IMG/VR virus record: IMGVR_UViG_3300023179_004149
Location: 186,001-250,000 of that record
Strand: one strand, 5' to 3'
Length of the DNA stretch: 64,000 bases
Shown: piece after piece, positions 1,101 through 46,187 of the stretch
How positions within the stretch are numbered: the stretch's first letter is position 1
How the letters are laid out: every line of letters starts with the position of its first letter
Notes under the pieces: generated by a model
What the model was told of the DNA's origin: nothing
Database searches by the model: none
The model's input: the letters and a program-made list of their open reading frames with translations, nothing else
Program-made: the position numbers and the translations under genes

Positions 1101-2756
1101 ATGGGTGCATTATTAGAATCAGGAAAAGTTGGTAACGTGTCGTTAAACCACTTAAAAAGAGTTCGTCAGGACGTTATCAATAGATGGGACAGCTTAGGCC
1201 TCTTAGAAGGTTTAACTGGTCATAGAAAAGAAAACATCGCTCAACTTTATGAAAACCAAGCTTCTTGGATGTTGAACGAATCAACAACATTGGGTACAGA
1301 AGGTTCATTTGAAACTGTTGTATTTCCAATCGTGAGGAGAGTATTCTCAAAATTATTAGCAAACGAAATCGTTTCAGTACAAGCATTAAACTTACCTATT
1401 GGTAAATTGTTCTACTTCGTACCAAAAATTGGTGAATCACGTTTCGATTCAACAAACGCACCGAAATCATTAGCTAACGCTAATATTAACTATGGTGCTG
1501 GTACAGGTTCAACTGGTGGTAACAACATGATGAGTATGGTATCTGGTAACGACTTCTCAGATAACAACAACCTTTATGATGGTTTCTATGGTGATGACGC
1601 TTTCTTTGATAAATCAAAAGGTAAATATACTACTTTAACAGCCTCAACTTACGGTTCGGGTTATACATTTAACTCAACATCAACATCTGGTTTTGCGGTT
1701 GCTAACCAAACTGGTATCACATCTGGTAATACAGGTATTGTAAAATTAACTTTCACAATGGGTAACGGTTTTGATTGGGAAAACATTGAAGACTTTATGT
1801 CATCTATGGTAATCACATCATCTAACCCTTCAGTTTCAGCGGTTGATTTCTATTTCCCAAGTCAGAAATACGGTAATCAGTTAATGGACTCAAACGGTGT
1901 GGTTTATGTTGCAATCCCTAACACAGGTTCAACAACAATAGCAATAACTGGTTTAACAGCTACAGCTAAGCAGTACGCTTCTCTTGAATTAGCTGATGAT
2001 ATGGGCGAAGTTTCTTTCGAACTTAAGTCTGTAACTGTATCAGTTATTGAAAGAAAATTAAGAGCGCAGTGGTCACCAGAACTTGCTCAGGACGTTAGTG
2101 CGTTCCATAACATTGACGCTGAGGCTGAATTAACAGCTTTATTGTCAGAGCAGGTAGCTGCTGAAATCGACAGGGAAATCCTTAAAGACCTTAGAAGAGG
2201 TGCTGCATGGAGATTATACTGGGATTATAAAGGTGCAACAGGTCGTGGTATCGATATTAACGCAGCTGGTGCTTTCTATACTCAGAAAGAATGGAACCAA
2301 ACATTGGTTACAGCAATCAACCAGGTTTCTGCACAGATCCACAAAGCAACATTAAGAGGTGGTGCAAACTTCATCGTATGTTCTGCTGAGGTATCAGCTA
2401 TCTTTGATGACTTGGAATATTTCCACGTATCAAACGCCGCTCCAGATCAGGACAAGTATAACATGGGTATTGAGAGAGTGGGTGCTTTAGCTGGTCGTTA
2501 CCAGGTTTACCGTGACCCTTACTTCCCTGCTGACACGATCCTTATCGGTCACAAAGGTACTTCATTGTTAGATACTGGTTACATCTACGCTCCATATGTA
2601 CCATTGCAATTAACACCAACAATGTATAATCCGTTCACTTTCGCCCCTGTGAAAGGTATCATGACTCGTTACGCTAAGAAGATGGTTAACAACCGTTTCT
2701 ATGGTGTGGTTAAGGTACAGAACGTTGTAACATTCGGTATCGATTCATTCAGATAA
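1101..2756 (+). CDS. gp23: Major capsid protein, T4 gp23-like
   Basis: Motifs FPIVRRVF, VSVQALNLPIGKLFY, RKLRAQWSPELAQD, AEIDREI, YAPYVPLQ, GIMTRYA. The N-terminal region ends MLNE|ST at residue 60, a plausible prohead-protease site. Confidence 0.97.
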   Translation: MGALLESGKVGNVSLNHLKRVRQDVINRWDSLGLLEGLTGHRKENIAQLYENQASWMLNESTTLGTEGSFETVVFPIVRRVFSKLLANEIVSVQALNLPIGKLFYFVPKIGESRFDSTNAPKSLANANINYGAGTGSTGGNNMMSMVSGNDFSDNNNLYDGFYGDDAFFDKSKGKYTTLTASTYGSGYTFNSTSTSGFAVANQTGITSGNTGIVKLTFTMGNGFDWENIEDFMSSMVITSSNPSVSAVDFYFPSQKYGNQLMDSNGVVYVAIPNTGSTTIAITGLTATAKQYASLELADDMGEVSFELKSVTVSVIERKLRAQWSPELAQDVSAFHNIDAEAELTALLSEQVAAEIDREILKDLRRGAAWRLYWDYKGATGRGIDINAAGAFYTQKEWNQTLVTAINQVSAQIHKATLRGGANFIVCSAEVSAIFDDLEYFHVSNAAPDQDKYNMGIERVGALAGRYQVYRDPYFPADTILIGHKGTSLLDTGYIYAPYVPLQLTPTMYNPFTFAPVKGIMTRYAKKMVNNRFYGVVKVQNVVTFGIDSFR

Positions 2757-26802: not shown

Positions 26803-27375
26803 TCATTTATTTTCACCTGCGGCGTATTTCACACCCATTATTGTACCAATAATACTGAATGAGTTGGTTAATAATATACCAAACATATTAGACCACGCCG
26901 ATTCCAATAACTTAGTATCGTAATGGTTTACCATGGCAAATACGTACAAACCAGTGGTAACAACACCAACACCAAGAACCACAATCAAAGCCACACGGAC
27001 AATTAATCCGATCAACTCAAATTGTGCCCTTTTCTGATAACTATCCAAATCCTCAACCGCAGCATCCCTCAATTGCTCAGCTTCAAATTTAGCATCCTGG
27101 GCCTCAGTTAAAGCAGCTTTTAATTTATTCATTAACCCAATATTTTCATCCTGGGCTTTGGTTAAGTCGATGTTCTGACTCTGTATCTTTTTGGTAATCT
27201 CAAGGCGTTTTTTTCTTGACTCCGTATCCAAACGCTTAGCCTCATCAAGATACGCCTTGAATTCCTCATCTGAATCCTCCTGGATCAGCTTTAATATATT
27301 ACCCTCAAGAGCAATTCTCTTTGATTTAAAAATCTCCAATAGTTGCTGCTTGGTTTCTTTATTTAAATTAATCAT
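26803..27375 (-). CDS. Coiled-coil membrane protein in two-component operon
   Basis: Coiled-coil N-part and two C-terminal TM segments, coupled to the response regulator stop. Confidence 0.75.
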   Translation of the reverse strand: MINLNKETKQQLLEIFKSKRIALEGNILKLIQEDSDEEFKAYLDEAKRLDTESRKKRLEITKKIQSQNIDLTKAQDENIGLMNKLKAALTEAQDAKFEAEQLRDAAVEDLDSYQKRAQFELIGLIVRVALIVVLGVGVVTTGLYVFAMVNHYDTKLLESAWSNMFGILLTNSFSIIGTIMGVKYAAGENK

Positions 27376-27812
27376 TATTTATATATCTTAAAAGGTGCTG
27401 TTCTATTTTTATATTTTGGGAAATCCTTTCTAAACTCTTCTAACCTGGGCTCAATCTCATCTGATTTTATTATCCAAAATTGCGCACCTGCCTTAACCGC
27501 CTTTGCTTGTTCCTCTGGCTCGTTACTCGATGATATAATACCAATAACAACGTTATTACCATGTTCAAAATTGATTCTTCTTACTAATTCTATACCATCA
27601 AACGATGACCCTATAATGTTTAAGTCCACAAATACACATTCGGGCCTCGATGTTAATTCTTTATATTTTGTTTCAAATAATTTTTCGGCATCATCTGCAC
27701 TATTTATCGACTCTAACGTTAACGTTATATCTAATAAACTACAAGCATCCTCAAATACCAGGTGGAATAAATCCTCGTCATCCACCAAAAGGATCGATTC
27801 AATCATGTTCAT
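27375..27812 (-). CDS. Single-domain response regulator (REC/CheY-like)
   Basis: ILLVDDED, VFVDLNI (phospho-Asp), DGIELV, IISSS, conserved Lys in WIIK. Confidence 0.92.
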   Translation of the reverse strand: MNMIESILLVDDEDLFHLVFEDACSLLDITLTLESINSADDAEKLFETKYKELTSRPECVFVDLNIIGSSFDGIELVRRINFEHGNNVVIGIISSSNEPEEQAKAVKAGAQFWIIKSDEIEPRLEEFRKDFPKYKNRTAPFKIYK

Positions 27813-27814
27813 TT

Positions 27815-29575
27815 TTACTTTAATTTAATTTTCATTTTTGTACCTATCTTATTTTTTTCACATGTGAGAACAAAACCATGTTCTTCCAATATTGCCATGC
27901 ATATATTTAAACCAAGACCTGAGCCAGGCTCCTTCTGTTCTTTTTTCCTCGTGTATGGTTTTGATAACTGTTCAAGATCGGCCTGTTCAATACCTCTACC
28001 GTTATCCTGAATTATCATATCACCATTCTCCATATAAATCTTTACATATTTAGTATTGGAATCATTATATTTTAAACCATTCCTAATTAAGTTATCGATA
28101 GCCGTACAAAACAACGATTCATTAACTTCTGTGGTTACCAAATCATCAATCACCACCTGACTAACATAAGCGGTATTAGATAAATATTTTTTTAATATCT
28201 CTTTTAAATTACATTCAGTCTTTGTTAATACAGCATCCTTTTTTACCAGGTTGGTGAACTCATAAACGCCCCTGTAAACCTTTTGGGTGTGTTCCAAACC
28301 CTCTTTGATTAACTTTAACGGAGCCTCTAACTTTAATTTAGCCGTTATTTCTGGATTAAGTCTTCTTTCCAATGATGAAACACCTCTCGGTATATAAGTA
28401 TTGATGCCAGAATGCATATCATGTCTTAATATCTTTGCGGCGTGTTCGAGATATGTATTCTTTTTTTCTAATTCCTGGGTGTTTTTAATAACATCACTAA
28501 TATCATACCTTATTGACATGAATCCAGTTAAATCACCCCATTCGTCAAATTCGGCTTTGATATTGGTGTCTACGTAGTAAATTTCACCGTTTTTAGCCCT
28601 ATTTGTCACAATAGATGACCATATTTTCTTATCCTTAACGGTTTTTTTGTACATCTCCGCCCAGAACTCTTTAGAATGCTCCCCAGAATTAACAATATGA
28701 TGATCCTTGCCAATCGCTTCTTTAGACTTCCAACCAGAAACCTCCTCAAATCTTTTATTAACATATGTAATTTTACCATGCTTATCCGTTTTTGAAACCA
28801 AAGCGGCAACATTGATAAACTTCTCAAGATCTTTGGTTCTTTTTTGCTCCAAAACATTTTCTTTAACGGAATAAGCAAATGAATATAATGAAGATAATAA
28901 GTGAGCAAAATCTATCTCCGTATCTGTCCAGGTGCGCTGTGTGAAACTTTCAATGCAGATTACACCAATAATATTACCTTTATATATGATAGGAACATCC
29001 AACATCGATTTAACACCCAGTGGTTTTAAATAAACCTCTTTAAAACAAATTGTGGCTGGATGCGTTTCTGCATTGTGAGCCACAACAATATTATCGTTTT
29101 CCAACGCCCTAAAATAAGGTTCAAAATCTTTTCTATATAATACTGCATCAGATTCCCATCTATTTTCGTGAGCCAAATATAATTGTTCACAATAGATCGA
29201 ATTCTTCTTATTATCCTCATATAACCAAATAGAACACCTATCCGCATCAATCGAATCCGCAACGCTCTCGGTTAATTCCTTAGCACCCTGTGAAGTATTA
29301 CCCTCATAAAATAATGGATTATGTGACTGGCCTATTAAAACCCTACTAAGCTTTTCCTTATATTCTTTTTCCTTTTTAATCAATTTGGCGTTAGCCATAT
29401 ATTCTCTCGCCATACCACCGAACACAGGTACGATGAATAAAATAGATATAAACTCAGCCCAACGAGTTGTTGGAGTTGATTGAAAGATACCCAATAAGAC
29501 ATTGATCTTTACATAAAAAAATATGAATAATATTAGAACAGCGAACCAGAAACTAATTTTGGGTAATCCTATCAT
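27815..29575 (-). CDS. Sensor histidine kinase (TM-GAF-PAS-HisKA-HATPase)
   Basis: N-terminal TM helices, GAF (SMLDVPI...IGVIC.E), PAS/PAC (ITYVNKRF...NRAKNGE), RHD His box, NLIRNGLKY, DNGRGI, GSGLGL. Confidence 0.92.
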   Translation of the reverse strand: MIGLPKISFWFAVLILFIFFYVKINVLLGIFQSTPTTRWAEFISILFIVPVFGGMAREYMANAKLIKKEKEYKEKLSRVLIGQSHNPLFYEGNTSQGAKELTESVADSIDADRCSIWLYEDNKKNSIYCEQLYLAHENRWESDAVLYRKDFEPYFRALENDNIVVAHNAETHPATICFKEVYLKPLGVKSMLDVPIIYKGNIIGVICIESFTQRTWTDTEIDFAHLLSSLYSFAYSVKENVLEQKRTKDLEKFINVAALVSKTDKHGKITYVNKRFEEVSGWKSKEAIGKDHHIVNSGEHSKEFWAEMYKKTVKDKKIWSSIVTNRAKNGEIYYVDTNIKAEFDEWGDLTGFMSIRYDISDVIKNTQELEKKNTYLEHAAKILRHDMHSGINTYIPRGVSSLERRLNPEITAKLKLEAPLKLIKEGLEHTQKVYRGVYEFTNLVKKDAVLTKTECNLKEILKKYLSNTAYVSQVVIDDLVTTEVNESLFCTAIDNLIRNGLKYNDSNTKYVKIYMENGDMIIQDNGRGIEQADLEQLSKPYTRKKEQKEPGSGLGLNICMAILEEHGFVLTCEKNKIGTKMKIKLK

Positions 29576-29859: not shown

Positions 29860-30840
29860 ATGAAAAAAGTAAATTTAAACGAACAAATCGTTAGAATGAG
29901 ATCCATTATGGGGCTCAATGAATCAAAAAGAACCGAAGCAGATGCCCAGAGAATACTCGCTGGCGTTGAAAACGCTGAGACTATAGTAAAACAATTCGCC
30001 CAGGGTGACCAATCAAAAGACCAAAAGAATATACCCATTATGGCATCCATATATAAAAATTTTAACTATACCGATGTTAAAAATATAGTGGATGTTATGA
30101 ACGATTATAATGATTTGGTTACTAAAAATAGGGTTAAACCTATTCAAATAGCCAAGGGTGTTTTATCAATAGGGGATAAATCCTTTAATGATTTTATTAG
30201 GTTTTCTGAATATATTCACGGTGAAAAGAACAAATATGCGGCACCTCAAAAAGGTTCAAGTGTTGATGCTGATTTCATCTCTAATAAAAAACCTATGTGG
30301 TCGGGTAATAATATCGATATCTATGAAGGTGATGAGGTTGGTAAATGTATCGCATACACCATGGGTGGTTTAACTGGTAGAGGTTATAGCTTCTGTATCG
30401 GTCAACCAGGTAATACCGTGTATCAATCTTACAGAGACACCAAAGTTTCATCATTCTATTTCGTGGTGGATAAAAACCACTTTAAAACCAATGAAGACGG
30501 TAGTGTAAATCTTGATGATCCATTACACATTGTGGTGTTCGATAATACACAACACGGTATAGAACTTACAGATGCTAACAACACAACTGGTAAAATCGCT
30601 GAACCATTTGGTACCAATTCAGATATATATGTTGATTATCTTAAAAATAAAGGCGTTCCAGTTGATCAACTCATCAATAAACCAAAAACCGATCAGGAAA
30701 GAAAAGAAGATGAATTGTTAGGTAGACCCAATCCAAGCCTTGAATGGTTTGTAAAATTACCGATTGATTTAAAATCAAAATACATAGGTAGAGGACACCA
30801 ATTAACAAACGATCAATTCGATTATCTCATAGGTAAATAA
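29860..30840 (+). CDS. Leader-tagged hypothetical protein
   Basis: Starts MKKVNLNEQIVRMRSIMGLNE. Contains GRGYSFCIG...YFVVD. Confidence 0.75.
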   Translation: MKKVNLNEQIVRMRSIMGLNESKRTEADAQRILAGVENAETIVKQFAQGDQSKDQKNIPIMASIYKNFNYTDVKNIVDVMNDYNDLVTKNRVKPIQIAKGVLSIGDKSFNDFIRFSEYIHGEKNKYAAPQKGSSVDADFISNKKPMWSGNNIDIYEGDEVGKCIAYTMGGLTGRGYSFCIGQPGNTVYQSYRDTKVSSFYFVVDKNHFKTNEDGSVNLDDPLHIVVFDNTQHGIELTDANNTTGKIAEPFGTNSDIYVDYLKNKGVPVDQLINKPKTDQERKEDELLGRPNPSLEWFVKLPIDLKSKYIGRGHQLTNDQFDYLIGK

Positions 30841-30841
30841 T

Positions 30842-31468
30842 ATGACACCACAAGATTTAATACAACAATATGTCAATACTGGTATCGGTATTCCCAGATA
30901 TCAATTTGATAGATTACCCAATGATTTAAAAAAATCATATATTAGAAAAATGTATATTTCATTGGATTATAAACCATATAATATTGTATATTATTATGGG
31001 GAGTTACCTGAACAAAAACAAATCGAAATTGTTAGTCACGATGGATTTTTAATTGAACACATCAACAACCCAACCGAAGCGGCACAATTGGCTGCCGTTA
31101 CAGAAGATGGTTTAGCTATTAAACATATTAAAAATCCATCGGAACAAGTACAAATTACTGCCGTTAAAAAAGATGGTATTGCAATTAAATATATTGACAA
31201 CCCATCCGAAGAGGTACAATTAACTGCCGTTAAAAAAGATTATCATAGTTTAAAACACATTATACAAAAGAGAATTATACCAAGTGAGGCGGTGCAATTG
31301 GCTGCCGTTAAAAAATTTGGCCCTATGATTGAATACATCTATAACCCATCCGAAACAGTACAATTAGCTGCCGTTAAAGAAAATCGTTTTGCTATTAAAT
31401 ATATTATAAAAAAGGGTATAAAACCGAGTGATGAGGTTTATAAAATTTTTAACCAATATGACAAATAA
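30842..31468 (+). CDS. Repeat protein (DUF4116-like ~22-aa repeats)
   Basis: NPSE.VQL.AVK.DG.AIKYI repeated about 5 times. Family name recalled from memory. Confidence 0.75.
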   Translation: MTPQDLIQQYVNTGIGIPRYQFDRLPNDLKKSYIRKMYISLDYKPYNIVYYYGELPEQKQIEIVSHDGFLIEHINNPTEAAQLAAVTEDGLAIKHIKNPSEQVQITAVKKDGIAIKYIDNPSEEVQLTAVKKDYHSLKHIIQKRIIPSEAVQLAAVKKFGPMIEYIYNPSETVQLAAVKENRFAIKYIIKKGIKPSDEVYKIFNQYDK

Positions 31469-32372
31469 AGATTTAATACACCAATATGTAAGTACAGGTA
31501 CTCAATTACCAGAACACCAATTGACTCAACTCAACACGAACCAATTGAAGAGTTATTTCAGACAACGTATTCTCGCTCAAGAATATGGCGTTGCTTTTCA
31601 ACAATATGAATATTTATTAGCCCCAGATGAAATAAAACCATTCATCATCAAATCAATCGCAAACGATGATGAATTTATTGATTTTTTGAATGGTAAGTCA
31701 CCAGAACGCTACGAAACGGAGGATAGGTATTATCATCGTTATGAACCAAAAATCGATTTCGCCGCCCTTATAAAAATGATATTAGAATCATACACTGAGG
31801 AAACACAAAATCCAAATCTATGGGCTATTAAAGAATTTATTGTTGGGATGGTTAGCACACCAGAAAATCAAAAAATTTATAATATTAAGGCCGACACCCA
31901 AGAGATATATAACATTATGTTGTCAACACCAGATTGTGGAAAAGATAAAACGGAAATGAATTATATATACTATATTTTAAAAACAACAGACACGCTAACC
32001 CCATTTAAAACATTTGCAAAAGATAAATTCGGGGCTTATTTGGAAATATTAAAAAATAAATCAAGTGATGATAAGTGGGAGAAGTTTGGAAACATATTCA
32101 AAACAACACCCATACCAAAACAAATAATAGAATTATCCAATACTTATGATTCTATGGGTGATGCTTTTTTATGGTATATGCCTAATGATGTGTTCTATGG
32201 GTTATTAGATTCTAAACACCCATTACATAGAATTAGCTTAATACCAGAGAAAAAAGTGAAACGGATGCTTCATAACGTATTTACTAAATACACCCAGGGT
32301 AACCCAGAAGAATACGCACAAGGTTTTACCAATCCTAAAGAAGTTATCCAAATTTATAATATGTATTATTAA
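31458..32372 (+). CDS. Hypothetical helical protein with N-terminal module shared with 30842
   Basis: MTNKDLIHQYVSTG vs MTPQDLIQQYVNTG. Confidence 0.7.
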   Translation: MTNKDLIHQYVSTGTQLPEHQLTQLNTNQLKSYFRQRILAQEYGVAFQQYEYLLAPDEIKPFIIKSIANDDEFIDFLNGKSPERYETEDRYYHRYEPKIDFAALIKMILESYTEETQNPNLWAIKEFIVGMVSTPENQKIYNIKADTQEIYNIMLSTPDCGKDKTEMNYIYYILKTTDTLTPFKTFAKDKFGAYLEILKNKSSDDKWEKFGNIFKTTPIPKQIIELSNTYDSMGDAFLWYMPNDVFYGLLDSKHPLHRISLIPEKKVKRMLHNVFTKYTQGNPEEYAQGFTNPKEVIQIYNMYY

Positions 32373-32748: not shown

Positions 32749-35382
32749 ATGACAATGAAAATTGTAATTACTGAAGAGCAACTTCAAAAATTATCCGAAT
32801 ATATGATTTCAAATAAATTATTTGAGGGTGAGTTTAGGTTAGATACGACCAACACCACACAAATAGATCATATATTTAATATATTTAAACAATCATACGA
32901 GAAATCTACTGGTGGTTCCTGGGATAAATCTAAATTTTTATCAAGAGCTAGTGATTGGTTATTTTTTGGTGATATGGATGGTTTTATTGCGGTAAGACCT
33001 CAGAAATCAGGTTTATACAAGTTAGTGGGTGTGGCTGGCTCACCAAAAAGCATATTAAGCGCTTTGAGTGAAATCGAATCCAAAAACATACCAGTATGGG
33101 GTATGGTTACTCAAAACATACAGACAATGCTCCAAAAGAAAGGATTTATAACACCAACACCCGAGCAATTACAACTACTATACAAATCCATACCATCATC
33201 CGTATTCGGCGGAGCCGAAACTCAGCAGAATCCTGACGGTAGCTTAACGTTAAAATATAACGATGTTGGTGACGCAACAAAATTCTTTGTTGGTAACGAA
33301 ATGTATTTCAATGCAATGAAGACCATGTTTGGGGATAAATTCAACCTGGATGAGGCAAGATCAAACCCAGAAAAAAATCCGAGAGTTACATTCGGGATGT
33401 TCATGGATAATCTGGTAAATAAATATACATATGAAAATATATTTGTGTCATTTAGAAATGATTTACATGTAACAGATGTAAATGTTAATAACAAATACAG
33501 CACCCCAACTGGTGTTTATTCATACCCGCTTATTTCATATTTCAGAAACAAATACGATTTATCCAGGATGGATGAAGGTATGTTCAGAGAAGCATTCCCA
33601 TACCAATCTAAATTACCTTATATGTATTTTATTGTCTTAAAATCACATAACGGTATCCTGGATGAAAACACAACTTTTGAGCAGGTTGTTCCTTACGTTA
33701 AAAAGATAATGGATCTTTATGGTGACATTACACCCGTATATAAAACATGTGAATTATATTTGAATAAAGATTTTAAATCAACATATAATTCTTCCCCTTA
33801 TCATGAAGCACATAACTTTTGGTTATTTCTGTATGAGGTTGCGGCCTATATAACTAAGAATAAAAAACAACATGCGATTAATATTATTTGTACTAAAATA
33901 GGTGTTAATGGCTTTGTTGACTATAAAGGTAACGGATATATCCACCCGTCAGAGCCAAAACAAGCGGTGTTCTTTAGAATTAAACCAATTGCTGATGTTC
34001 TAATTTATAAAACCCAGATAACCAATTCTAATGATAAATTTGAATCATATTTAAAACAATTAAAACCAGGTGTGAAAAATCAGGTGTTGGTGAATAAATT
34101 ATTGGATTTTAACTTAATCTTCAATTACAATCAAGTTAATAGGATCGTTAATGCTTCAACGGATCAGCTCGATACGGCTTTAAGATTAATAATTAAAGAA
34201 GCTAATAAAATGGATCTGTCTAACTCATATATGGATAGTGTATTTTTCGCTGTTACAGAACCAGGTGGTAAAGATAAATTGGCCCTTGCTTTGCTCGATT
34301 CAAAATTAATCTACCACCATTCAATTGTTACGATGCTGGGACACGTATCGGACGAAAATCTTTTTGCTGAAAAACTATTAGAGAAATCGGAAAGTTTTAA
34401 TAATTACAAAATAGTAAACGAAATATTATTTTATTTAAAAGACCCGATTAAAGGGGCTAAAGATATTTTGGCTAAATTGGATCTTGAATTTGCCAGCGTG
34501 GAAATAATACAAATATTGATCGAACATGGTGGTGATGTATTAGCATATTTAATAACAAATAAAGTTTTTGGTAAAGAAAATTATCACGACTTCATTAATA
34601 CAATTCTTACACGTGTTAAAGATAATCTAAAATACTGTGTGTTCCTAATCAAAAAAGAAAATAAAAATATTAGTAGATTGACCTTAGATACTATTTTCTC
34701 ATGGGTTGACCTACCAACAGATAGAGCTAAATTAATGAAAATAGTTCTACAACTATTAGATTATCAACCAAGGCCAGCTATTTTAAAGTTTATATTAAGT
34801 AATAGTCCAGATTTATACAATGTTTTAAATGCGATCTACACCAAACAAAACGGATTTACCGATGAACAATACGTTATGTTATTTACCTCACAATATCTCA
34901 GCGGTAAAAACTATTTCTTTGTTCTTGATAAATGGCTCGAAAAGCTTAAAACTAAAGAAGGCCTTACTGCCGATGAAATATTCTTTAGTGGAACAATTGG
35001 AAATAAAATACGTGGTTTAAGTGACGAGGAAGGGTATGAGAACGTTAGAACAAAATTAATGGATACATACGTCGAATTGGTTAATAAAGTAATATCAAAA
35101 GTTGATGATCCAGTTTTGGTTTATCAAAAATTATTTAAACTCAATTTTATTTCAGCTGATAAATTATTGATCAAACTCATCACACAAATTAGTCCAGAAA
35201 ACGGAGAAATGTTAGCTAATGATATCCAGGATAAAAAGGGTGCTGATATGTTCAACCCTATTTATGCATTCTCTAATAAACTAACTGATGAATTAAATAA
35301 CGCAAAAACAAATAAAACATACGATATCCTAAAACGCATGGATAATGTGATCGAAGCCTTTTATAACGTAACCAATTTATAA
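32749..35382 (+). CDS. Multi-domain probable head-packaged protein
   Basis: Leader MKIVITEEQLQKLSE...LFE, internal NLDE|ARSNPE, a module ending GFVD.KG.GYIHPSEP.Q.VFF (possibly ART-like), and helical repeats. Confidence 0.7.
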   Translation: MTMKIVITEEQLQKLSEYMISNKLFEGEFRLDTTNTTQIDHIFNIFKQSYEKSTGGSWDKSKFLSRASDWLFFGDMDGFIAVRPQKSGLYKLVGVAGSPKSILSALSEIESKNIPVWGMVTQNIQTMLQKKGFITPTPEQLQLLYKSIPSSVFGGAETQQNPDGSLTLKYNDVGDATKFFVGNEMYFNAMKTMFGDKFNLDEARSNPEKNPRVTFGMFMDNLVNKYTYENIFVSFRNDLHVTDVNVNNKYSTPTGVYSYPLISYFRNKYDLSRMDEGMFREAFPYQSKLPYMYFIVLKSHNGILDENTTFEQVVPYVKKIMDLYGDITPVYKTCELYLNKDFKSTYNSSPYHEAHNFWLFLYEVAAYITKNKKQHAINIICTKIGVNGFVDYKGNGYIHPSEPKQAVFFRIKPIADVLIYKTQITNSNDKFESYLKQLKPGVKNQVLVNKLLDFNLIFNYNQVNRIVNASTDQLDTALRLIIKEANKMDLSNSYMDSVFFAVTEPGGKDKLALALLDSKLIYHHSIVTMLGHVSDENLFAEKLLEKSESFNNYKIVNEILFYLKDPIKGAKDILAKLDLEFASVEIIQILIEHGGDVLAYLITNKVFGKENYHDFINTILTRVKDNLKYCVFLIKKENKNISRLTLDTIFSWVDLPTDRAKLMKIVLQLLDYQPRPAILKFILSNSPDLYNVLNAIYTKQNGFTDEQYVMLFTSQYLSGKNYFFVLDKWLEKLKTKEGLTADEIFFSGTIGNKIRGLSDEEGYENVRTKLMDTYVELVNKVISKVDDPVLVYQKLFKLNFISADKLLIKLITQISPENGEMLANDIQDKKGADMFNPIYAFSNKLTDELNNAKTNKTYDILKRMDNVIEAFYNVTNL

Positions 35383-36900: not shown

Positions 36901-37517
36901 ACCTTAACGAACAATTAAATATAATGAAAACCATGATGGGTATCAAAGAAGATGATATAATCATCGATAAAAATCCCAACATTATGCACTTTTTTCATGG
37001 TGGTGACCTGGATGAGGTTAAACAAGACCTCATCCAAAGATCCGACAGACAAGTTCATGGCCCTGGCCTTTATCTTACAACAAATTGGGAGAGAGCAAAG
37101 AAATACGCCAAAGGCGGTAGAAAAATGTATATTGTGTCTGTGGAGAAAGGCAATAATCTCGATGATAAAGACATCGATATGGTTGCGCTCACACAATTCC
37201 TTAAACAAAACCTTTCACCCAAAAAAGTACAATATGTGCTCGATAGAGCCAATACCAGATTGCACGGTGGTAAAATACCAGCTTATATCGTTAATAACAT
37301 ACTTATAGATAGCGGATTCCTCAAATCAAATTTTTCATTAATGTGGAAAACATTCCTTATAGGTGTCGGCATTGATTACGTTCTTGATGAAACAGCTTTC
37401 GGCGGCGAAGGACAAATGATGGTATTATACAACACCAATAAAATAAAAAATATCAGGAGAATCATGCCAAATGATAAACTTCCAACATACGATTTAAGAC
37501 CATACAATGAAACTTAA
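36897..37517 (+). CDS. Leader-tagged ADP-ribosyltransferase-fold protein
   Basis: MNLNEQLNIMKTMMGIKE, FFHGG...GPGLYLTT...AKKYA. Confidence 0.7.
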   Translation: MNLNEQLNIMKTMMGIKEDDIIIDKNPNIMHFFHGGDLDEVKQDLIQRSDRQVHGPGLYLTTNWERAKKYAKGGRKMYIVSVEKGNNLDDKDIDMVALTQFLKQNLSPKKVQYVLDRANTRLHGGKIPAYIVNNILIDSGFLKSNFSLMWKTFLIGVGIDYVLDETAFGGEGQMMVLYNTNKIKNIRRIMPNDKLPTYDLRPYNET

Positions 37518-38410: not shown

Positions 38411-38995
38411 ATGAACCTTAACGAACAAATCTCCAGGATAAAAGAAATGATGGACATAAACGAAGCACTTCAACCCATCACCGTTTATCACGGATCCAAT
38501 ACCAAAATCACAAACTTCGTGGATGACTTTGTGGGCGGAGAACAAGCCAACGACCTGGAAGGGCCTGGCATATACTTCACAACAATAGCGGAAAATGCCG
38601 AATATTTTGGAACATACGTACATGAAGTAACAATAACACCAAGAAAACTACTAACCGAAAGCCCAAATGGGGGCACCACCATCGAATTAACAAAATTAGC
38701 CAAAATGGCACCCGATTGGGAAAGCACAGCTCAAAATTGGGACGAAAACCCACAGATAGGTTTAAATAAAGCTATCAGAGACTTTATTTCATATAACCAC
38801 AACCAAAAAGATAGGTTCCTACAGGTATGGATAGACTTCTATAAAAATGACCCAGTGGATTATGTTAGAAACTGTGTTAAACTCGGATATGATGGTATCG
38901 TTGTTAATAGAGATGTTATAGACGGAAAACGACTTAAACACTATATCATATATAACCCAAGCATAATACAAATAAAAAAAGTAACCCAGGTATAA
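38411..38995 (+). CDS. Leader-tagged ADP-ribosyltransferase-fold protein (ART-PolyVal-like)
   Basis: MNLNEQISRIKEMMDINE, VYHGS...GPGIYFTT..ENAEYF...GYDGIVV...YIIYNP..IQI. Confidence 0.8.
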   Translation: MNLNEQISRIKEMMDINEALQPITVYHGSNTKITNFVDDFVGGEQANDLEGPGIYFTTIAENAEYFGTYVHEVTITPRKLLTESPNGGTTIELTKLAKMAPDWESTAQNWDENPQIGLNKAIRDFISYNHNQKDRFLQVWIDFYKNDPVDYVRNCVKLGYDGIVVNRDVIDGKRLKHYIIYNPSIIQIKKVTQV

Positions 38996-39004
38996 CCCTG
39001 GGTT
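38983..39004. terminator. Bidirectional terminator
   Basis: aacccagg-tataa-cctgggtt between convergent genes. Confidence 0.75.
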
Positions 39005-39016
39005 TTATTTTTAATT

Positions 39017-41602
39017 TTACTCTAATGCGTTTAATACTTTTTCCTTTATTGTTTGAACACGATTATGATTCGATTTCGCCATCTTTTCAACAATCAAAGC
39101 CCTCAACCGATCAGCCACCTTAGGGTCCTTCAATCTATATACCTTTAATAACGAATCGTACTTACCCAATAAAGATTGATCCTCATCCGATATACCAATC
39201 AAATTATAAAACACATACCCATTAACCAATTGTAAAACCCTATCCTTACCAATTTGATCCTTTAGTTTGATGAACCGTTGAACAATCTCATCATCTGATT
39301 CCTTCTTAACATTTAATTCTTTATATAATGGTTCCAATTCAGCGCCAACCAAATCAAAATACATCTCCCTCAACTCAGCTGGAAACTTATTAACAACAAA
39401 CGGCGATATGGTCTTAACTATCGTATCGGTTAACACATGGACAATATGTTTGATAACATCAAACCCCTTGTTTTTGTTAAATAAACCAAATAACACATCG
39501 TATCGACCATGATTTATCAATTCCCTGACATAAATGTCTGTGTTCATGTTATTAATCGTTCTACCATGATACAAGACACCAAAGGCATCCTCAACAAGAA
39601 CATCCAAAGATTGTGACCAATATGATTCCATCCCCTTCAACACACCCCTTTCATTACGATACTTTAACTCATACTCCGTTAACCACCCAATCACAAAATT
39701 CTTAAACTTCTGATTGAACACCCCATAATAAGGCCCAGTAAAATGACAATAAATACCAGAGGCAAATCTACCAAGAGGATCCTTAATATTCCAATCACCC
39801 TCCTTTATTAAATAAAAAACAAAACTATTATCCCTTATCATATTGCCAACACCCGCACCATAACCTTCACCACCATCATCAATAGTTGATTTGATCATCG
39901 TTTGCTTTATATCCTTAATACCAGAAAGATTCTCACATGTGCTAAAATGATCACTATCTCCCATATTTGCAATATCATGCGAATGCCTGGATATAACAGC
40001 ATACATCTTACCTTCACCACCAGCCCTGGTCATCGAATCCAAATAACTCGTGTATCTTTTCAATAAACCAACATCATACTTTTGCAATAACTTGGTTAAT
40101 TTAACCTCCTGGTTACTCTTCTCATCCTTCACCTTGTTACCGTCAAAATCAACCAACACAAAACCATTATCGGCAATAACACGATCAATATCATGCCTTA
40201 ACTTATCACTAATATTAACATCCAAATTTAAAGTCGGTGTTTTCCTGGTCGGCGTAATCATCTTCCCAGTATCGAGATCATAATATAAACGATATACATT
40301 CTTACCAAATAAATTATCCATATTAGCATCAAAACGCTTTTGATAGGCCCTGGCTTGCTTGGATAAATTCAACTCAATGGCCTCACCCAACCACATCACC
40401 CCCCTCATGCGGGAAACCTCTTCATTTAATTTATTTAACGTCTCTTCTGCAAATTCTAATGACTCTTTCTCATTATCATCAAGCTCTCTATTAATACCAC
40501 TTATAACTTTTCGTATTATATCCTCTTCCCACCTAAACGCATACAACACATACGATAACAAACTCTCACCACGCCTAATAATTCTCTTATCATATATTAT
40601 TTTCATTAAGTTATAATTAATTATCATCTTAATGTTTTTATCCGTTATGTTATTGGCCATATCAGGGTCTTCAATTAATTTGGTATGTAATGATTGCAAA
40701 TAAACTTTCTTTAACTCATCTCGCAACCCATCAAAATCAAAAAACCAATTATAATACCTCTTAACCAAAACCTTGCTACGTTCCAAAGGCATCGAGTTTA
40801 ACTCATCCATCTGTTTCTTATCATAAATTACATCATTTGATAATAACCTGTTTTCTAATGAGTCGTGTGTTCCAATAACACCTTTCTTATTTATATTAAT
40901 AAATAAGGTGTTTATATCAACAGACTTCATATCACCATCAATCTTATTAAGATCATAGATAACCGAACCATGTAACGTATTATCCCAATCCCAAACACCT
41001 GAAACATTAACACCATTATAGCCATTCCACTCCATAATCCTGGTGGAAAATGAAGCCGAACTACTGGCTTGCGTTTTATTATACATCGAATTAAAATCAC
41101 TCGCGGCTTGTTTTAACATATTGATAAACTCACGATACTTTGGAACCTTTAAACCCAAATAACTTAAATTATTAACAACAACCAAATACCGCTTGCTTAT
41201 ATCGCCATGCCCATATAAAAAACTATAAAATATATCATTCAACTCCTTCAATGTGTTAAATAACCACTTACCTTGTTCATTGCTCTTTACTCGATATAAA
41301 TTTTTATAGAAATCCATATTAACCCTATAAACACTATCACCAACCTGAATCAACCCAGACATATCCTTAAAAGCAGATCCATATTTTTTATCATAATCAG
41401 CTTTATCCCTTAACTTATAAGTTGAAAAATACATACCCGAACCAAAGTGACCCGTGCCCCTACCTTGCATTCTCCATATGTTATCAGAACCATACGGTTT
41501 TAAATTAGATAAATTAACACTACCCGAATGATAGTTGTAATCGGCCTCAATTAATAAAACCATTTTTTTTATTTGTTGTAACTCAGAAAGTAACTTATCC
41601 AT
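39017..41602 (-). CDS. Fused two-cassette leader-tagged polyprotein, N-module ART-like
   Basis: N-leader LLSELQQIKKMV.LIE, YHSG...GHFGSGMYFST, and a second internal leader LNKLNEEVSRMRGVMWLGE at 40391-40438. Confidence 0.75.
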   Translation of the reverse strand: MDKLLSELQQIKKMVLLIEADYNYHSGSVNLSNLKPYGSDNIWRMQGRGTGHFGSGMYFSTYKLRDKADYDKKYGSAFKDMSGLIQVGDSVYRVNMDFYKNLYRVKSNEQGKWLFNTLKELNDIFYSFLYGHGDISKRYLVVVNNLSYLGLKVPKYREFINMLKQAASDFNSMYNKTQASSSASFSTRIMEWNGYNGVNVSGVWDWDNTLHGSVIYDLNKIDGDMKSVDINTLFININKKGVIGTHDSLENRLLSNDVIYDKKQMDELNSMPLERSKVLVKRYYNWFFDFDGLRDELKKVYLQSLHTKLIEDPDMANNITDKNIKMIINYNLMKIIYDKRIIRRGESLLSYVLYAFRWEEDIIRKVISGINRELDDNEKESLEFAEETLNKLNEEVSRMRGVMWLGEAIELNLSKQARAYQKRFDANMDNLFGKNVYRLYYDLDTGKMITPTRKTPTLNLDVNISDKLRHDIDRVIADNGFVLVDFDGNKVKDEKSNQEVKLTKLLQKYDVGLLKRYTSYLDSMTRAGGEGKMYAVISRHSHDIANMGDSDHFSTCENLSGIKDIKQTMIKSTIDDGGEGYGAGVGNMIRDNSFVFYLIKEGDWNIKDPLGRFASGIYCHFTGPYYGVFNQKFKNFVIGWLTEYELKYRNERGVLKGMESYWSQSLDVLVEDAFGVLYHGRTINNMNTDIYVRELINHGRYDVLFGLFNKNKGFDVIKHIVHVLTDTIVKTISPFVVNKFPAELREMYFDLVGAELEPLYKELNVKKESDDEIVQRFIKLKDQIGKDRVLQLVNGYVFYNLIGISDEDQSLLGKYDSLLKVYRLKDPKVADRLRALIVEKMAKSNHNRVQTIKEKVLNALE

Positions 41603-41605
41603 ACA

Positions 41606-42850
41606 CTATTTTAATTTATCAAACTCTCTATCATAAGAAGATTTTTCATCCAACGGATTCTTTAGATGATTGGTTACATAATCCTCAAATCGGAAAAAAG
41701 CACCATTAATTTTATTCAAAAGATCTTCTGAAATATCTGGCGTTATTTTTAAAGGTTCATTAACCTCATTCAAACCCATAACCTTTTTTATTTGATTAAG
41801 CCCCTCATCTAACATATCTGAACTAATACCTAAAGTATTTAAATACTTATTAAAATCCATATCATACACTTCATACCATTTAATGTTGTTACTCAAATAT
41901 AAAGAATAACTATCTGGTAAATAGGTCATCAAAAACCTAGCATCATCAATATCCATGTTAAAATCCATTATAACATACACATACCCCAAACCAGCATAAT
42001 CTTCCCAATAATTCTCACTACCAACTTGTGCAAAACACCAATTACTATAACAACCCAATTGCTGCATAGCCTCATAATCATTAACCTTGATTACCAGAAC
42101 ATCGTTTTTATCATATACCAAATCAGCATCAAGATTCGGCAATAAATCCAAAACATGTTTACGACCCGTTTCAGCGCCATCACCAATATAACTCATGGTC
42201 TTACTCAAATGATCAAAACCCGCAACAATATCTTTAAAACTCCTACCACTACGAAATAGTTTAGGCAACATCTCATCGTGTTTTTTCTTAGGTAAAGCCT
42301 GTAATATTTTATTAATAACCCTCAACCCCTCATACACTTTTTTAAAATTATATGAAATAAACTGTTGGTAATTCGGGTCGGCTGTATCAATGTTATATAT
42401 ATATTCTTTAATTGGTTTCATCATATTACGCTTAATAATATCTGATAATTTACCCCAACTTTTAACCAAATAACTCCTTTCCTTTAACATCTCATATAAA
42501 GACATTACATGAAATCTATTATCCTGGGTTTCATATTTGTAGTCGGTTAAATTACCTGGAACAGGAAATAATTGTTTATCATACACTCTTACTAAATCGT
42601 AAAAATCCGCAACAATATCCATATTCCTCTCAGTATATTTACTCTGGTCAGATTCAAACCTATTCATCTGATAATAAAAATCAGTAACCAACTTCGTAAA
42701 ATTATTACCGTTTGTAAGATCAACAATAGCTTCCTTGACACGAGGCTCTAACTTACCCGAATTAAAATAAACTTTATCGGCTAATTGAACATTCTCATTC
42801 AAACCCATCATTACCCTCATACGGAAAACTTGCTCGTTTAATTTATTCAT
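41606..42850 (-). CDS. Leader-tagged hypothetical protein
   Basis: MNKLNEQVFRMRVMMGLNE, LGCYSNWCF module, internal LDEGLNQIKKVMGLNE near the C-terminus. Confidence 0.75.
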   Translation of the reverse strand: MNKLNEQVFRMRVMMGLNENVQLADKVYFNSGKLEPRVKEAIVDLTNGNNFTKLVTDFYYQMNRFESDQSKYTERNMDIVADFYDLVRVYDKQLFPVPGNLTDYKYETQDNRFHVMSLYEMLKERSYLVKSWGKLSDIIKRNMMKPIKEYIYNIDTADPNYQQFISYNFKKVYEGLRVINKILQALPKKKHDEMLPKLFRSGRSFKDIVAGFDHLSKTMSYIGDGAETGRKHVLDLLPNLDADLVYDKNDVLVIKVNDYEAMQQLGCYSNWCFAQVGSENYWEDYAGLGYVYVIMDFNMDIDDARFLMTYLPDSYSLYLSNNIKWYEVYDMDFNKYLNTLGISSDMLDEGLNQIKKVMGLNEVNEPLKITPDISEDLLNKINGAFFRFEDYVTNHLKNPLDEKSSYDREFDKLK

Positions 42851-43453
42851 TTATACTCCACTAAAACTTAATTGGTTATTATCATTTATATATAAATCAA
42901 CTGACCCCATATCACGTGATGCTTTCATTAATATATTCTCGTCCTCATCATCATAACCCCTATCAAAAAAACCAGCACCGTGACCATTACGTGTCAACCA
43001 AAAGTCATGACCAAGTTGTTCAGCACCAAACTCATTAATCGCCCTATGAATTAAATCCTCACCACATAACTGAATGAATTTCTTAATACCTATATAAGCA
43101 TCAATTAACGAATCTGACTCAATATCTTCACGACTGAATGATACAATACCCTTATTATTCAACTGCGATGTTAATCTAATTAATTTATCCAATTCGGTAT
43201 CATCCTCATCCTCATCATCGTCGTCATAAACACTATCATCACCTTGTTCATCTCTCAAAGATTCCTCCTCAGTCCATAATGCCGCTTCAATATACCCCAT
43301 CAATATCTTATTTATAATATCGGTAGATATATCAGATTCGTCTAATACACTACCATCATCCTGAATATCCTTGGCAAATTGATACCTACCCGAATTTTCA
43401 GATATACCCATTATCGCCCTCATGCGGGACACTTGTTCATTTAATTTATTCAT
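42851..43453 (-). CDS. Leader-tagged hypothetical protein (GHDFWLTRNGHGAGF motif)
   Basis: Start reassigned to MNKLNEQVSRMRAIMGISE at 43453. Confidence 0.75.
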   Translation of the reverse strand: MNKLNEQVSRMRAIMGISENSGRYQFAKDIQDDGSVLDESDISTDIINKILMGYIEAALWTEEESLRDEQGDDSVYDDDDEDEDDTELDKLIRLTSQLNNKGIVSFSREDIESDSLIDAYIGIKKFIQLCGEDLIHRAINEFGAEQLGHDFWLTRNGHGAGFFDRGYDDEDENILMKASRDMGSVDLYINDNNQLSFSGV

Positions 43454-43466
43454 AACGATATCAATT

Positions 43467-44081
43467 TTATTTTGTTTCATAATTATCTGGTACCAGGTTA
43501 CTAAGATGCTCCACAAACGTATCAAACTCGAAAAATTTGGGATTGTATTTATATGGTACCTCTTTACCATCTGGACGTAAAACAACAACTTTATAATCAC
43601 TAAATTTACTATGAGTATCTCTAAATCCAGATATAATATCCACAATATAGGAATAATGATTCGTATCAGTTAATATAATTCTGAATTTGATCCTATCTGG
43701 TGTATTCTCGAATATATTAACCTTCACCACAACAGCTTTAACGTCACCAATATTTATTGTTTTACCCACATATGAATTAATTAGATCCTCTGAAAATATA
43801 CCAGATACATACCAGTGCTTATTCCCTGATTTATCAAGAATTGGTTTAAAATCACCAAACTCCAAATCTATAGGTTCACCAGAAACATCAACATCCGCAA
43901 CATCCGATTTTTTAAAATTACCAAATCTGCCAACTTTATCATCTGGCTTTAACTTCTTCCTGGTAGTGTCAAGATTCTTGGTCTTATTCCAATACCAATC
44001 AGAATCATCCCAAGATTCACTTAACCCCATCATCCGCCTGATGTTTTGAATCTCCTCATTTAATGTTTGTTTCTGTTTCAT
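43467..44081 (-). CDS. Leader-tagged hypothetical protein
   Basis: MKQKQTLNEEIQNIRRMMGLSE. Confidence 0.75.
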   Translation of the reverse strand: MKQKQTLNEEIQNIRRMMGLSESWDDSDWYWNKTKNLDTTRKKLKPDDKVGRFGNFKKSDVADVDVSGEPIDLEFGDFKPILDKSGNKHWYVSGIFSEDLINSYVGKTINIGDVKAVVVKVNIFENTPDRIKFRIILTDTNHYSYIVDIISGFRDTHSKFSDYKVVVLRPDGKEVPYKYNPKFFEFDTFVEHLSNLVPDNYETK

Positions 44082-45627: not shown

Positions 45628-45653
45628 AAATGAACCTATTTATAATAAAAAAT

Positions 45654-46187
45654 ATGGTACTTACAGAACAAATAAATAGGATTAAAGAAATGATGGGATT
45701 AGATCCCAAAAAACGATTTGAGTATAAACCCATCACATATGAAGAATTTGATGACGCACTATCAGATATCTCCACATTAAACCTGGAAGACGATCAACTG
45801 GGTATACCTGAATTTAATCAGAATACCGATAATTTTTTATTACGAATCGATGACATCGACCTCTATATAAAAAATAGACAACAGTTACCAGAAAGTGGCC
45901 CCTATGAATTATTAATTGATAATAACGATGGCGATACCATAGGTTTCATTCGCGGAACCAAATTTAATAACATCCTTTCATTTAATCTCGTATATATTGC
46001 ACCAGAAGAAAGAGGTAATGGCATCGGTACCAGTATCTACCAATACTTTTTGAACCACGGTTATATAATGAAGACCGATAAGGAAATTAGTGATTCCACT
46101 CATTCCATATATACTAACCTCGCAAAATCTGAATATACGCCCATTATGTTCGCCGATCATAGAGTGGGACTGATTAAATCATCATAA
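45654..46187 (+). CDS. Leader-tagged GNAT-like acetyltransferase
   Basis: MVLTEQINRIKEMMGL, LVYIAPEERGNGIGTSIY (motif A), TATTTATA upstream. Confidence 0.8.
   Translation: MVLTEQINRIKEMMGLDPKKRFEYKPITYEEFDDALSDISTLNLEDDQLGIPEFNQNTDNFLLRIDDIDLYIKNRQQLPESGPYELLIDNNDGDTIGFIRGTKFNNILSFNLVYIAPEERGNGIGTSIYQYFLNHGYIMKTDKEISDSTHSIYTNLAKSEYTPIMFADHRVGLIKSS

What the first reader, a model, noticed from the sequence alone, without database searches (positions are those of the whole stretch)
40391..43453. Leader-coding DNA acts as a repeat and has produced fused polyproteins
Seen: the 861-aa ORF has an internal leader LNKLNEEVSRMRGVMWLGE (40391-40438). Its DNA (ccctcatgcgggaaacctcttcatttaatttatt on +) is nearly identical to the real start at 43453 (ccctcatgcgggacacttgttcatttaatttatt), with ATG replaced by TTA. 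The 414-aa ORF has another internal leader (LDEGLNQIKKVMGLNE, ~41767-41812) followed by only ~50 aa. Inference: cassettes are gained, fused and truncated by recombination at the leader, and the maturation protease would cut fusions back into single domains.
Basis: partly seen in the sequence, partly recalled or inferred. Interest (0 to 1): 0.6.

Follow-up and report, generated by a model that had tools for sequence, protein, structure and literature searches.

The report
Fused head-cargo genes in T4-like jumbo phage
A 321-kb T4-like phage carries a fast-changing row of genes that all start with the same short peptide, probably a tag for packing into the phage head, and neighbouring genes have fused so that the second gene's tag now sits inside a longer protein.

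Summary
The 861-aa ORF (39017-41602, minus strand) has an internal leader at 40382-40435. The 414-aa ORF (41606-42850, minus strand) has one at 41765-41815.

The genome is a 320,934-bp T4-type virus record with a gp21-type prohead protease and a gp23 capsid protein. At least 12 genes in the window start with an ~18-residue peptide (LNEQ..RMK..MG[LI]xE). This fits a capsid-targeting propeptide ending in a protease site, which is inferred, not shown.

Both long ORFs are derived fusions of genes that stand alone elsewhere:
- **The halves of the 861-aa ORF** have 468 and 25 stand-alone homologues. No other protein among 1.84 billion representatives holds both.
- **The join** sits exactly where the closest homologues of the first half end. 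A small deletion of stop plus ATG fits better than "ATG became TTA".
- **The 52-aa tail of the 414-aa ORF** is the remnant of a ~300-aa NUDIX-bearing module, still intact in a close relative (L056).

L056 has different cassettes and a third fusion. Three of six breakpoints lie at a cassette start or leader 5' edge. A block with tenfold lower dS starts at a leader's first codon. Recombination within leaders and protease cutting remain unproven. I rate this a new variant of a known kind (T4 internal proteins, polyvalent proteins).

The parts
39017..41602 (-). 861-aa ORF, an in-frame fusion of two cargo genes (A then B)
   Evidence: each half has stand-alone homologues; no other protein holds both halves
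41546..41602 (-). Degenerate N-terminal leader of the 861-aa ORF (residues 1-19, ends L-I-E)
   Evidence: predicted helix followed by a low-confidence linker in model mea2d1c7c95d4
40436..41545 (-). Domain A (residues 20-389), the YNYH family; it ends exactly where the closest stand-alone homologues end
   Evidence: no known fold found
40382..40435 (-). Internal leader (residues 390-407): the former N-terminal leader of gene B without its Met, still ending L-G-E
39020..40381 (-). Domain B (residues 408-861), the INLNLSK family
   Evidence: homologues start at this point, directly after a short N-terminal peptide ending in Glu
41606..42850 (-). 414-aa ORF: leader, domain C, internal leader, then a 52-aa remnant of module Y
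41765..41815 (-). Internal leader of the 414-aa ORF (residues 346-362, Met retained, ends L-N-E); homologous to the N-terminal leader of a stand-alone gene in L057
41609..41764 (-). 52-aa remnant of module Y. Compared with L056 it has one 316-nt and two 12-nt in-frame deletions and has lost the NUDIX domain
42851..43453 (-). Gene D (200 aa, phrog_1915), leader at 43397-43453; in L056 it is fused behind a 313-aa domain X
43467..44081 (-). 204-aa leader-bearing cassette, absent from L056
35384..38995 (+). Five abutting or overlapping leader-bearing cargo genes (372, 133, 206, 300 and 194 aa); the last is an ART-PolyVal ADP-ribosyltransferase
29860..30840 (+). 326-aa leader-bearing gene at the left edge of the array
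45630..46187 (+). GNAT acetyltransferase with a leader at 45654-45704
38983..39004 (.). Hairpin between the convergent ART gene and the 861-aa ORF; homology with L056 resumes here
1101..2756 (+). gp23-type major capsid protein; its N-terminal region contains an M-L-N-E-S site resembling the leader ends

Best explanation
The window lies in a T4-type jumbo phage. Between about 29.8 and 46.2 kb it holds a hyperplastic array of cargo genes for enzymes such as an ADP-ribosyltransferase, a GNAT and other effector-like proteins.

Each cargo gene starts with an ~18-residue helical peptide (LNEQ..RMK..MG[LI]xE). I take this peptide for the counterpart of the T4 capsid-targeting sequence. It would dock the protein to the scaffold core and then be cut off after its final Glu by the gp21-type prohead protease.

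The genes abut or overlap, for example TAA directly followed by ATG. A deletion of a few bases can therefore remove a stop codon, with or without the next start codon, and weld two cargo genes together. The second gene's leader is left as an internal linker. This happened at least three times in this lineage:
- A~B, in the window only.
- C~Y, in both the window and relative L056, with Y later eroded to 52 aa in the window.
- X~D, in L056 only.

The internal leaders still end in [LI]-x-E, so the protease probably separates the fused halves inside the prohead.

Cassettes are also replaced between close relatives, with edges at cassette starts (leader 5' ends) and at the terminator.

Shown: the fusions, their derived state, the cassette turnover and the breakpoint positions. 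Inferred: packaging, cleavage and any role of leader DNA in recombination.
For: **T4-type head genes.**
- PF03420 prohead protease and PF07068 gp23 are found in the window's own genome.

**Leader distribution.**
- The leader sits at the N-terminus of 11 further genes in the window and one elsewhere in the genome.
- In IMG/VR it is N-terminal in nearly all of 55 matches.

**The leader behaves as a lineage-specific propeptide.**
- The same cargo families carry at least four different short N-terminal peptide types in different lineages.
- A Glu lies 0-2 residues before the conserved start in all 107 A-family proteins that have the start motif near the N-terminus, and exactly 1 residue before it in all 22 such B-family proteins.
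- The structure models show a leader helix followed by a low-confidence linker.

**Fusions are derived.**
- There are 468 stand-alone A homologues and 25 stand-alone B homologues.
- The three closest A homologues end exactly at the residue aligned with L389.
- The exhaustive search found 198 cluster representatives, and none but the window's own protein matches both halves.
- C and Y are separate leader-bearing genes in L057. Y's N-terminal leader aligns with the internal leader, 41% identity over 190 aa, E 3e-39.
- D stands alone in the window but is fused in L056.

**Cassette turnover.**
- L056 shares the flanking genes at dS 0.4-0.8 and the D-C block at dS 0.05-0.12.
- That block starts at the third base of D's ATG.

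**T4 paradigm.**
- Diverse internal proteins share only a capsid-targeting sequence that gp21 removes, and cleavage is C-terminal to Glu (PMC3012670, PMC9026906).
Against: - There are no virion proteomics or expression data, so packaging and cleavage rest on analogy.
- The leader has no sequence similarity to the 10-residue T4 capsid-targeting sequence and is about twice as long.
- Two leaders (at 37507 and 45654) lack the Glu at the usual position.
- The internal leader of the 861-aa ORF is degenerate: 16 bits against 33-39, with W in place of the conserved G. It may no longer function.
- Only one close relative was available, a 7.6-kb contig.
Confidence: 0.7

Rival explanations
1. One reading: the leader-coding DNA is itself the recombination substrate. 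Homologous exchange between leader copies drives cassette gain, fusion and truncation, much as PeSL elements or integron sites do.
For: - Leader DNA forms the first and third direct-repeat families in the array.
- The block of low dS begins at the first codon of a leader.
- BP1, BP2 and BP6 lie at a cassette start or leader 5' edge.
- Partial leaders occur at ORF ends: L056 domain X starts with five leader-like residues, and leader-like C-termini occur at 25040-25084, at genome 273151-273198 and in G002.
- PeSL-mediated shuffling in T4-type phages is a precedent (PMC2839356).
Against: - Leader copies are 62-79% identical, with exact runs of 15 nt or less.
- Breakpoints lie at the leader's 5' edge, not inside it, and no chimeric leader was seen.
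- A gene start and a leader start cannot be told apart.
- BP3 is a 9-nt microhomology deletion and BP5 lies at a terminator hairpin.
- The A~B join needs only a 4-6 nt deletion.
- The leader-like end of the 414-aa ORF also resembles an internal stretch of gene D (family D14).
Confidence: 0.3
2. The fusions are stable two-domain proteins that are not cut. The internal leader is decaying into a plain linker. This would be a step toward the large polyvalent proteins of other phages.
For: - The internal leader of the 861-aa ORF scores 16 bits against 33-39 for N-terminal ones.
- Domain A occurs inside larger multi-domain proteins of up to 1800 aa in other lineages.
- The neighbouring cargo domains (ART-PolyVal, GNAT, ParB_N, PcfJ, NUDIX, kinase-like) are of the kinds listed for polyvalent proteins (PMC5512222).
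Against: - All three internal leaders keep the [LI]-x-E site.
- In the multi-domain relatives a Glu still precedes the A-domain start.
- Propeptides of this protease class carry few cleavage determinants besides Glu.
Confidence: 0.25
3. The fused ORFs are assembly or sequencing artefacts of a metagenomic contig.
For: The record is a metagenome assembly, and the join could not be checked in reads.
Against: - The C~Y fusion, with the same internal leader, is present in an independent assembly, L056.
- The A~B join is a clean in-frame difference with no frameshift, inside an 861-codon open frame in DNA of 35% G+C.
- L056 shows a third fusion of the same kind.
Confidence: 0.05

Closest known systems
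T4 internal proteins (IPI, IPII, IPIII) with their capsid-targeting sequence, processed by the gp21 prohead protease
   Same: - A T4-type head module with an S77 protease and gp23.
- Otherwise unrelated, fast-evolving proteins share only a short N-terminal peptide that ends in a hydrophobic-x-Glu site.
- The locus is highly variable between relatives (PMC3012670, PMC9026906).
   Different: - The peptide is about 18 residues rather than 10 and has no sequence similarity to the T4 one.
- It heads at least 13 genes rather than 3.
- The cargo is mostly enzyme-sized (130-450 aa).
- Natural tandem fusions with internal leaders are seen.
- Packaging and cleavage are untested here.
Polyvalent proteins of phages and conjugative elements (Iyer et al. 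2017, PMC5512222)
   Same: - A similar domain repertoire occurs in the neighbourhood: ART-PolyVal, GNAT, ParB_N, kinase-like, PcfJ, NUDIX.
- Delivery with the DNA is predicted.
- Several effector modules are joined in one polypeptide and then released by proteolysis.
   Different: - Here most modules are separate genes, each with its own leader.
- The fusions hold only two modules.
- There is no embedded peptidase. Release would depend on the prohead protease acting at retained leaders.
PeSL-mediated modular shuffling in hyperplastic regions of T4-type phages (Arbiol et al. 2010, PMC2839356)
   Same: - A short repeated element stands at the start of each cassette in a hyperplastic region.
- Insertions, deletions and replacements between close relatives are bounded by that element.
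   Different: - The repeated element here is coding (the leader), not an intergenic promoter plus stem-loop.
- The cassettes abut with no intergenic spacer.
- Recombination at the element was not demonstrated.
Propeptide-bearing ejection and inner-body proteins of phiKZ-like giant phages (201phi2-1, phiKZ, SPN3US)
   Same: Many head-internal proteins are cleaved after Glu by a gp21-related protease, and the propeptides have few other determinants (PMC9026906, PMC5694885).
   Different: - The head lineage differs, and the cleavage motif there is S/A-x-E.
- No shared leader of this kind and no cassette array has been described for those phages.

Membership tests
T4-type capsid-targeting propeptide system | The phage encodes a T4-type prohead protease (Peptidase_S77) and a gp23 capsid protein | tested here: met
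   PF03420 at 31.9 bits in the genome search and 50.4 bits on the ORF; PF07068 at 221 bits. The protease gene is interrupted by an intein.
T4-type capsid-targeting propeptide system | A short N-terminal peptide shared by otherwise unrelated proteins | tested here: met
   Twelve genes in the window start with it: 11 with the typical leader plus the degenerate one heading the 861-aa ORF. One more lies elsewhere in the genome. The mature parts are unrelated.
T4-type capsid-targeting propeptide system | The peptide ends in the protease site (hydrophobic-x-Glu), directly before the conserved mature start | tested here: met
   10 of 12 N-terminal leaders in the window and all 3 internal ones end in [LI]-x-E. 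A Glu lies 0-2 residues before the conserved start in all 129 A- and B-family homologues that have the start motif near the N-terminus.
T4-type capsid-targeting propeptide system | Sequence homology to the T4 capsid-targeting sequence (10 residues) | tested here: not met
   The leader is 18-19 residues. It shows no resemblance to the T4 peptide, whose sequence I know from memory only; its length comes. This makes it analogous, not a family member by sequence.
T4-type capsid-targeting propeptide system | Proteins are found in the head and are cleaved at the site | not testable with these tools
   Needs virion mass spectrometry.
Polyvalent proteins | Two to fifteen effector domains of the known repertoire in one polypeptide | tested here: inconclusive
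   The 861-aa ORF has two modules, but neither matches Pfam, PHROGs or a PDB fold. L056's C~Y carries NUDIX. Repertoire domains occur in neighbouring genes.
Polyvalent proteins | An embedded peptidase (often a zincin-like MPTase) | tested here: not met
   No peptidase family was found in either fusion.
PeSL-type cassettes | An intergenic early promoter plus stem-loop in front of each cassette | tested here: not met
   Cassettes abut or overlap, from an 11-nt overlap to a 13-nt spacer. Only one hairpin was seen, at 38983-39004 between convergent genes.

The most novel reading that the evidence does not exclude
The leader is a portable, lineage-specific address label, and its coding DNA also acts as a cassette boundary. 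Phages of this clade would swap leader-tagged effector genes at these boundaries. Occasional loss of the stop between cassettes would build protease-separable polyproteins. This would be a stepwise natural route from T4-style internal-protein cassettes to the giant polyvalent proteins of other phages. The extreme C-poor coding strand shared by all cassettes of the variable block, including those unique to either relative, would mark a common mobile pool.
Probability: 0.3. Interest if true: 0.75.

Novelty: new variant of a known kind. Interest (0 to 1): 0.55.

Why it matters
If the leader is a capsid-targeting propeptide, this phage packs a dozen or more enzymes into its head for delivery with the DNA. 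That is far more than T4. The leader would then give a simple sequence rule for listing injected effectors in uncultured jumbo phages.

The fusions show how multi-effector polyproteins can arise from single cassettes and still be taken apart by the head protease.

The leader could also serve as a packaging tag for foreign proteins, as the T4 sequence already does.

Tried and rejected
**Searches that found nothing useful**
- DNA and protein searches of the phage collection gave only distant matches to the B half, 21-29% identity in Dickeya, Ralstonia and Agrobacterium jumbo phages. The A half gave none.
- IMG/VR scans with either half found no close relative.
- The metagenome scan returned only L056's contig and the window's own contig.
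- Three contigs carrying A or B homologues had no DNA on file.
- A text search for the leader motif in papers found nothing.

**Cargo function**
- Pfam and PHROGs gave nothing for domains A, B, C, X or Z.
- Profile searches of PDB sequences gave nothing.
- Foldseek had no match at E 0.001 or better for either model.
- VIA-align on model A gave only generic helical-repeat matches, Z 5.4 or lower, to residues 247-388. The N-terminal alpha/beta part of A was not searched on its own.

**Other checks**
- The T4 late-promoter motif TATAAATA is not enriched in the window.
No read-level check of the join was made, and read laying was not used.
The coordinates were recomputed from references instead.

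**Readings I considered and set aside**
- That different leader codon choices in the plus- and minus-strand groups show gene conversion. The whole minus-strand block has a C-poor coding strand, which explains the difference.
- That the last five codons of the 414-aa ORF are a leader fragment. The motif is rare (13 sites in the window), but the same stretch also resembles an internal part of gene D (family D14). I leave it open.
Full report
**1. What the window is**

The window is bases 186001-250000 of a single 320,934-bp virus record with 34.5% G+C.

The genome encodes a T4-type prohead protease (Peptidase_S77) just left of the window. It also encodes a gp23-type major capsid protein at window 1101-2756. 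An acidic ORF at 23-1069, rich in [LIV]-x-E sites, precedes the capsid gene and may be the scaffold; I did not test that assignment. This is a T4-like jumbo phage from a metagenome.

**2. The observation**

I built a profile from ten N-terminal leaders and ran it over the six-frame translation of the whole genome. The results were:
- 11 N-terminal copies in the window, at 31-39 bits.
- One weaker N-terminal copy elsewhere in the genome, on a kinase-like ORF.
- Two leader-like C-termini.

The repeat finder, run without any prior, lists the leader DNA as families D1 (7 copies) and D3 (3 copies, one of them the internal leader).

**3. What the leader is**

All leaders read roughly M-x-LNEQ-x-x-[RK]-[MI]-[KR]-x-x-M-G-[LI]-x-E. 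The proteins behind them are unrelated to each other. They include:
- an ART-PolyVal ADP-ribosyltransferase,
- a GNAT acetyltransferase,
- a weak DUF3990 match,
- a phrog_1915 protein,
- several proteins with no family match.

A pattern scan of IMG/VR found the same peptide in 48 loci (55 matches). It lies 2-5 residues after a Met in nearly every case.

The strongest argument for a removable address peptide comes from the homologues of three cargo families, A, B and C. The same conserved mature domain is headed by at least four different short peptide types in different lineages. In all 107 A-family and all 22 B-family proteins that have the conserved start motif near the N-terminus, a Glu lies 0-2 residues before that start. 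The peptide therefore follows the phage lineage and not the cargo, and it ends in Glu.

The capsid protein's own N-terminal region contains M-L-N-E-S, which resembles the leader ends. The structure models show the leader as a helix followed by a low-confidence linker.

In T4, diverse internal proteins share only a capsid-targeting sequence that docks them to the scaffold core. The gp21 protease removes it by cutting after Glu (PMC3012670; PMC9026906). That the leader here plays this role is an inference. It has no sequence similarity to the T4 peptide.

**4. The 861-aa ORF is a derived fusion**

The N-terminal half (A) has 468 homologues. Most are 380-425 aa and cover 93-100% of the query. The C-terminal half (B) has 25 homologues, mostly 450-500 aa.

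In distant jumbo phages the B homologues also begin at the protein's N-terminus.

The three closest A homologues end at exactly the column aligned with L389 of the 861-aa ORF. The next residue, N390, is the second residue of a typical leader. So the TTA codon is the last codon of gene A, and gene B's ATG is missing.

The neighbouring gene junction at 42848-42853 reads TAA directly followed by ATG. Loss of those six bases would give the observed join. A 4-nt deletion from an overlapping stop-start arrangement would do so too.

An exhaustive HMMER search of 1.84 billion cluster representatives found 198 related proteins. None but the window's own matches both halves. The fusion is recent and, as far as these data go, unique.

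**5. The 414-aa ORF**

Its stand-alone homologues are 345-368 aa and end a few residues before the internal leader.

A 92%-identical protein, P0146, is 663 aa long. After the same internal leader it continues into a module of about 300 aa (Y) that ends in a NUDIX domain.

In another relative, L057, C and Y are separate genes. Y's own N-terminal leader aligns residue for residue with the internal leader: 41% identity over 190 aa, E 3e-39. This is direct evidence that an N-terminal leader became internal. In this case the Met is retained.

The window's 52-aa tail is what remains of Y after several changes:
- a 316-nt in-frame deletion between 9-nt direct repeats,
- two 12-nt deletions,
- loss of everything beyond residue 409.

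**6. Comparison with the close relative L056**

L056 is a 7,645-bp contig. Its locus runs in the orientation of the window's minus strand. The shared genes are GNAT, PcfJ, a small ORF, D, C and the ART. The differences are:
- **204-aa cassette.** The window has it. L056 has a 313-aa domain X in that place, fused in frame to D through D's leader, again without its Met.
- **861-aa fusion.** The window has it. L056 has the intact Y-NUDIX module plus a 330-aa cassette Z.
- **Gene upstream of the ART.** L056 has a ParB_N gene and the window has a 300-aa gene.

The breakpoints, in window coordinates, are:

| Breakpoint | Position | Location |
|---|---|---|
| BP1 | 44077 | Just after the start codon of the first cassette |
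| BP2 | 43451 | Third base of D's ATG |
| BP3 | about 41724-41748 | 9-nt microhomology deletion |
| BP4 | 41624 | Inside the Y remnant; whether leader-like codons follow it is left open |
| BP5 | 39014 | Right after the stop codon, next to the shared hairpin at 38983-39004 |
| BP6 | 38404 | 7 nt upstream of the ART start |

Synonymous divergence is 0.40-0.83 in the flanking genes. It is 0.046 in D and 0.12 in C, and the high identity is uniform from 43451 to 41724. This block was therefore exchanged recently, and its left edge is the first codon of a leader.

A more distant relative, G002, has only about 4 kb where the window has 16 kb, and it lacks A, B, C, D and PcfJ in that interval.

**7. 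What remains unproven**

Leader copies are 62-79% identical, with exact runs of at most 15 nt. That is poor substrate for homologous exchange.

All leader-associated breakpoints lie at the 5' edge, which is also the gene start. I saw no chimeric leader.

Selection for intact genes, together with tight gene packing, could give the same picture. I therefore rate "recombination at the leader" as possible (about 0.3). I rate [quoted passage not shown] as the better-supported account.

Cleavage of the fusions is likely, because all three internal leaders keep [LI]-x-E. It is untested, and the internal leader of the 861-aa ORF has drifted.

**8. Relation to what is known**

The system works like the T4 internal-protein and capsid-targeting-sequence system. 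It differs in using a longer, unrelated peptide, in the number of tagged genes, and in showing natural tandem fusions.

The cargo repertoire in this array and in L056 (ART-PolyVal, GNAT, ParB_N, NUDIX, PcfJ), plus the kinase-like leader-bearing ORF elsewhere in the genome, is of the kind described for polyvalent proteins (PMC5512222). Domain A occurs inside proteins of up to 1800 aa in other lineages, often still preceded by a Glu. The fusions here look like early steps toward such proteins.

PeSL shuffling in T4-type phages (PMC2839356) is the closest described cassette mechanism. Its intergenic promoter plus stem-loop is absent here.

I found no paper that mentions this leader motif.

**9. 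Limits**

- Only one close relative exists in the collections searched.
- The functions of A, B, C, X and Z remain unknown.

Noticed in passing
L004:97-1899 (genome 183551-185353, just left of the window): The gp21-type prohead protease gene is interrupted by an intein with a LAGLIDADG endonuclease domain. The Peptidase_S77 match is split around it.
   Followed up: partly
window 22509-24953 (+): A UvrD-like helicase also carries an intein, with Intein_splicing and Hint matches between the helicase motifs.
   Followed up: no
window 39017-44081: The variable cassette block has an extreme GC skew: -0.41 to -0.43 on the + strand across 39001-43500 (-0.30 in the next window, which runs past the block's end), and a coding strand with about 10% C. 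Only one other place in the 321-kb genome reaches this level. Cassettes unique to L056 (X, Z) and the A homologue in L057 show the same skew, but the flanking ART, PcfJ and GNAT genes do not.
   Followed up: partly
genome 257861-261025 (-), outside the window: A tandem family of six small paralogous ORFs with similar N-termini. Five of the six have the opposite coding-strand skew, G-poor at -0.34 to -0.59.
   Followed up: no
window 25040-25084 (-); genome 273151-273198 (+); G002 162779-163219 (-): Leader-like peptides sit at the very C-terminus of three proteins: a 323-aa Lys-rich and acidic protein, a 130-aa ParB-like protein, and a 154-aa protein in relative G002. They may be relics of fusions or C-terminal targeting peptides. 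T4 Alt is reported to have a C-terminal propeptide.
   Followed up: partly
window 32749-35382 (+) and genome 172712 (+): A second N-terminal peptide type (M-K-I-V-I-T-E-E-Q-L...) heads an 877-aa ORF and a 215-aa ORF. The same type heads A- and B-family homologues in other phage lineages, so this genome may use two address peptides.
   Followed up: partly
window 27375-29575 (-): The phage encodes a GAF-PAS histidine kinase and a response regulator next to the array. Both are conserved in relatives L057 and G002.
   Followed up: no
window 30842-32372 (+): Two adjacent paralogous ORFs with DUF4116 repeats. They contain a 144-nt tandem repeat (family D2) and share similar 5' ends (family D4).
   Followed up: no
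L014 (IMG/VR contig of 129,722 bp, bases 346-380): Another internal leader without a Met, preceded by at least 115 open codons that run off the contig end. This is probably a further fusion in an unrelated contig.
   Followed up: partly
window 23-1069 (+): The acidic ORF before the capsid gene, possibly the scaffold, ends in a Met- and Lys-rich helix-like stretch that loosely resembles the leader. It might be the docking partner, or the likeness may be chance.
   Followed up: no
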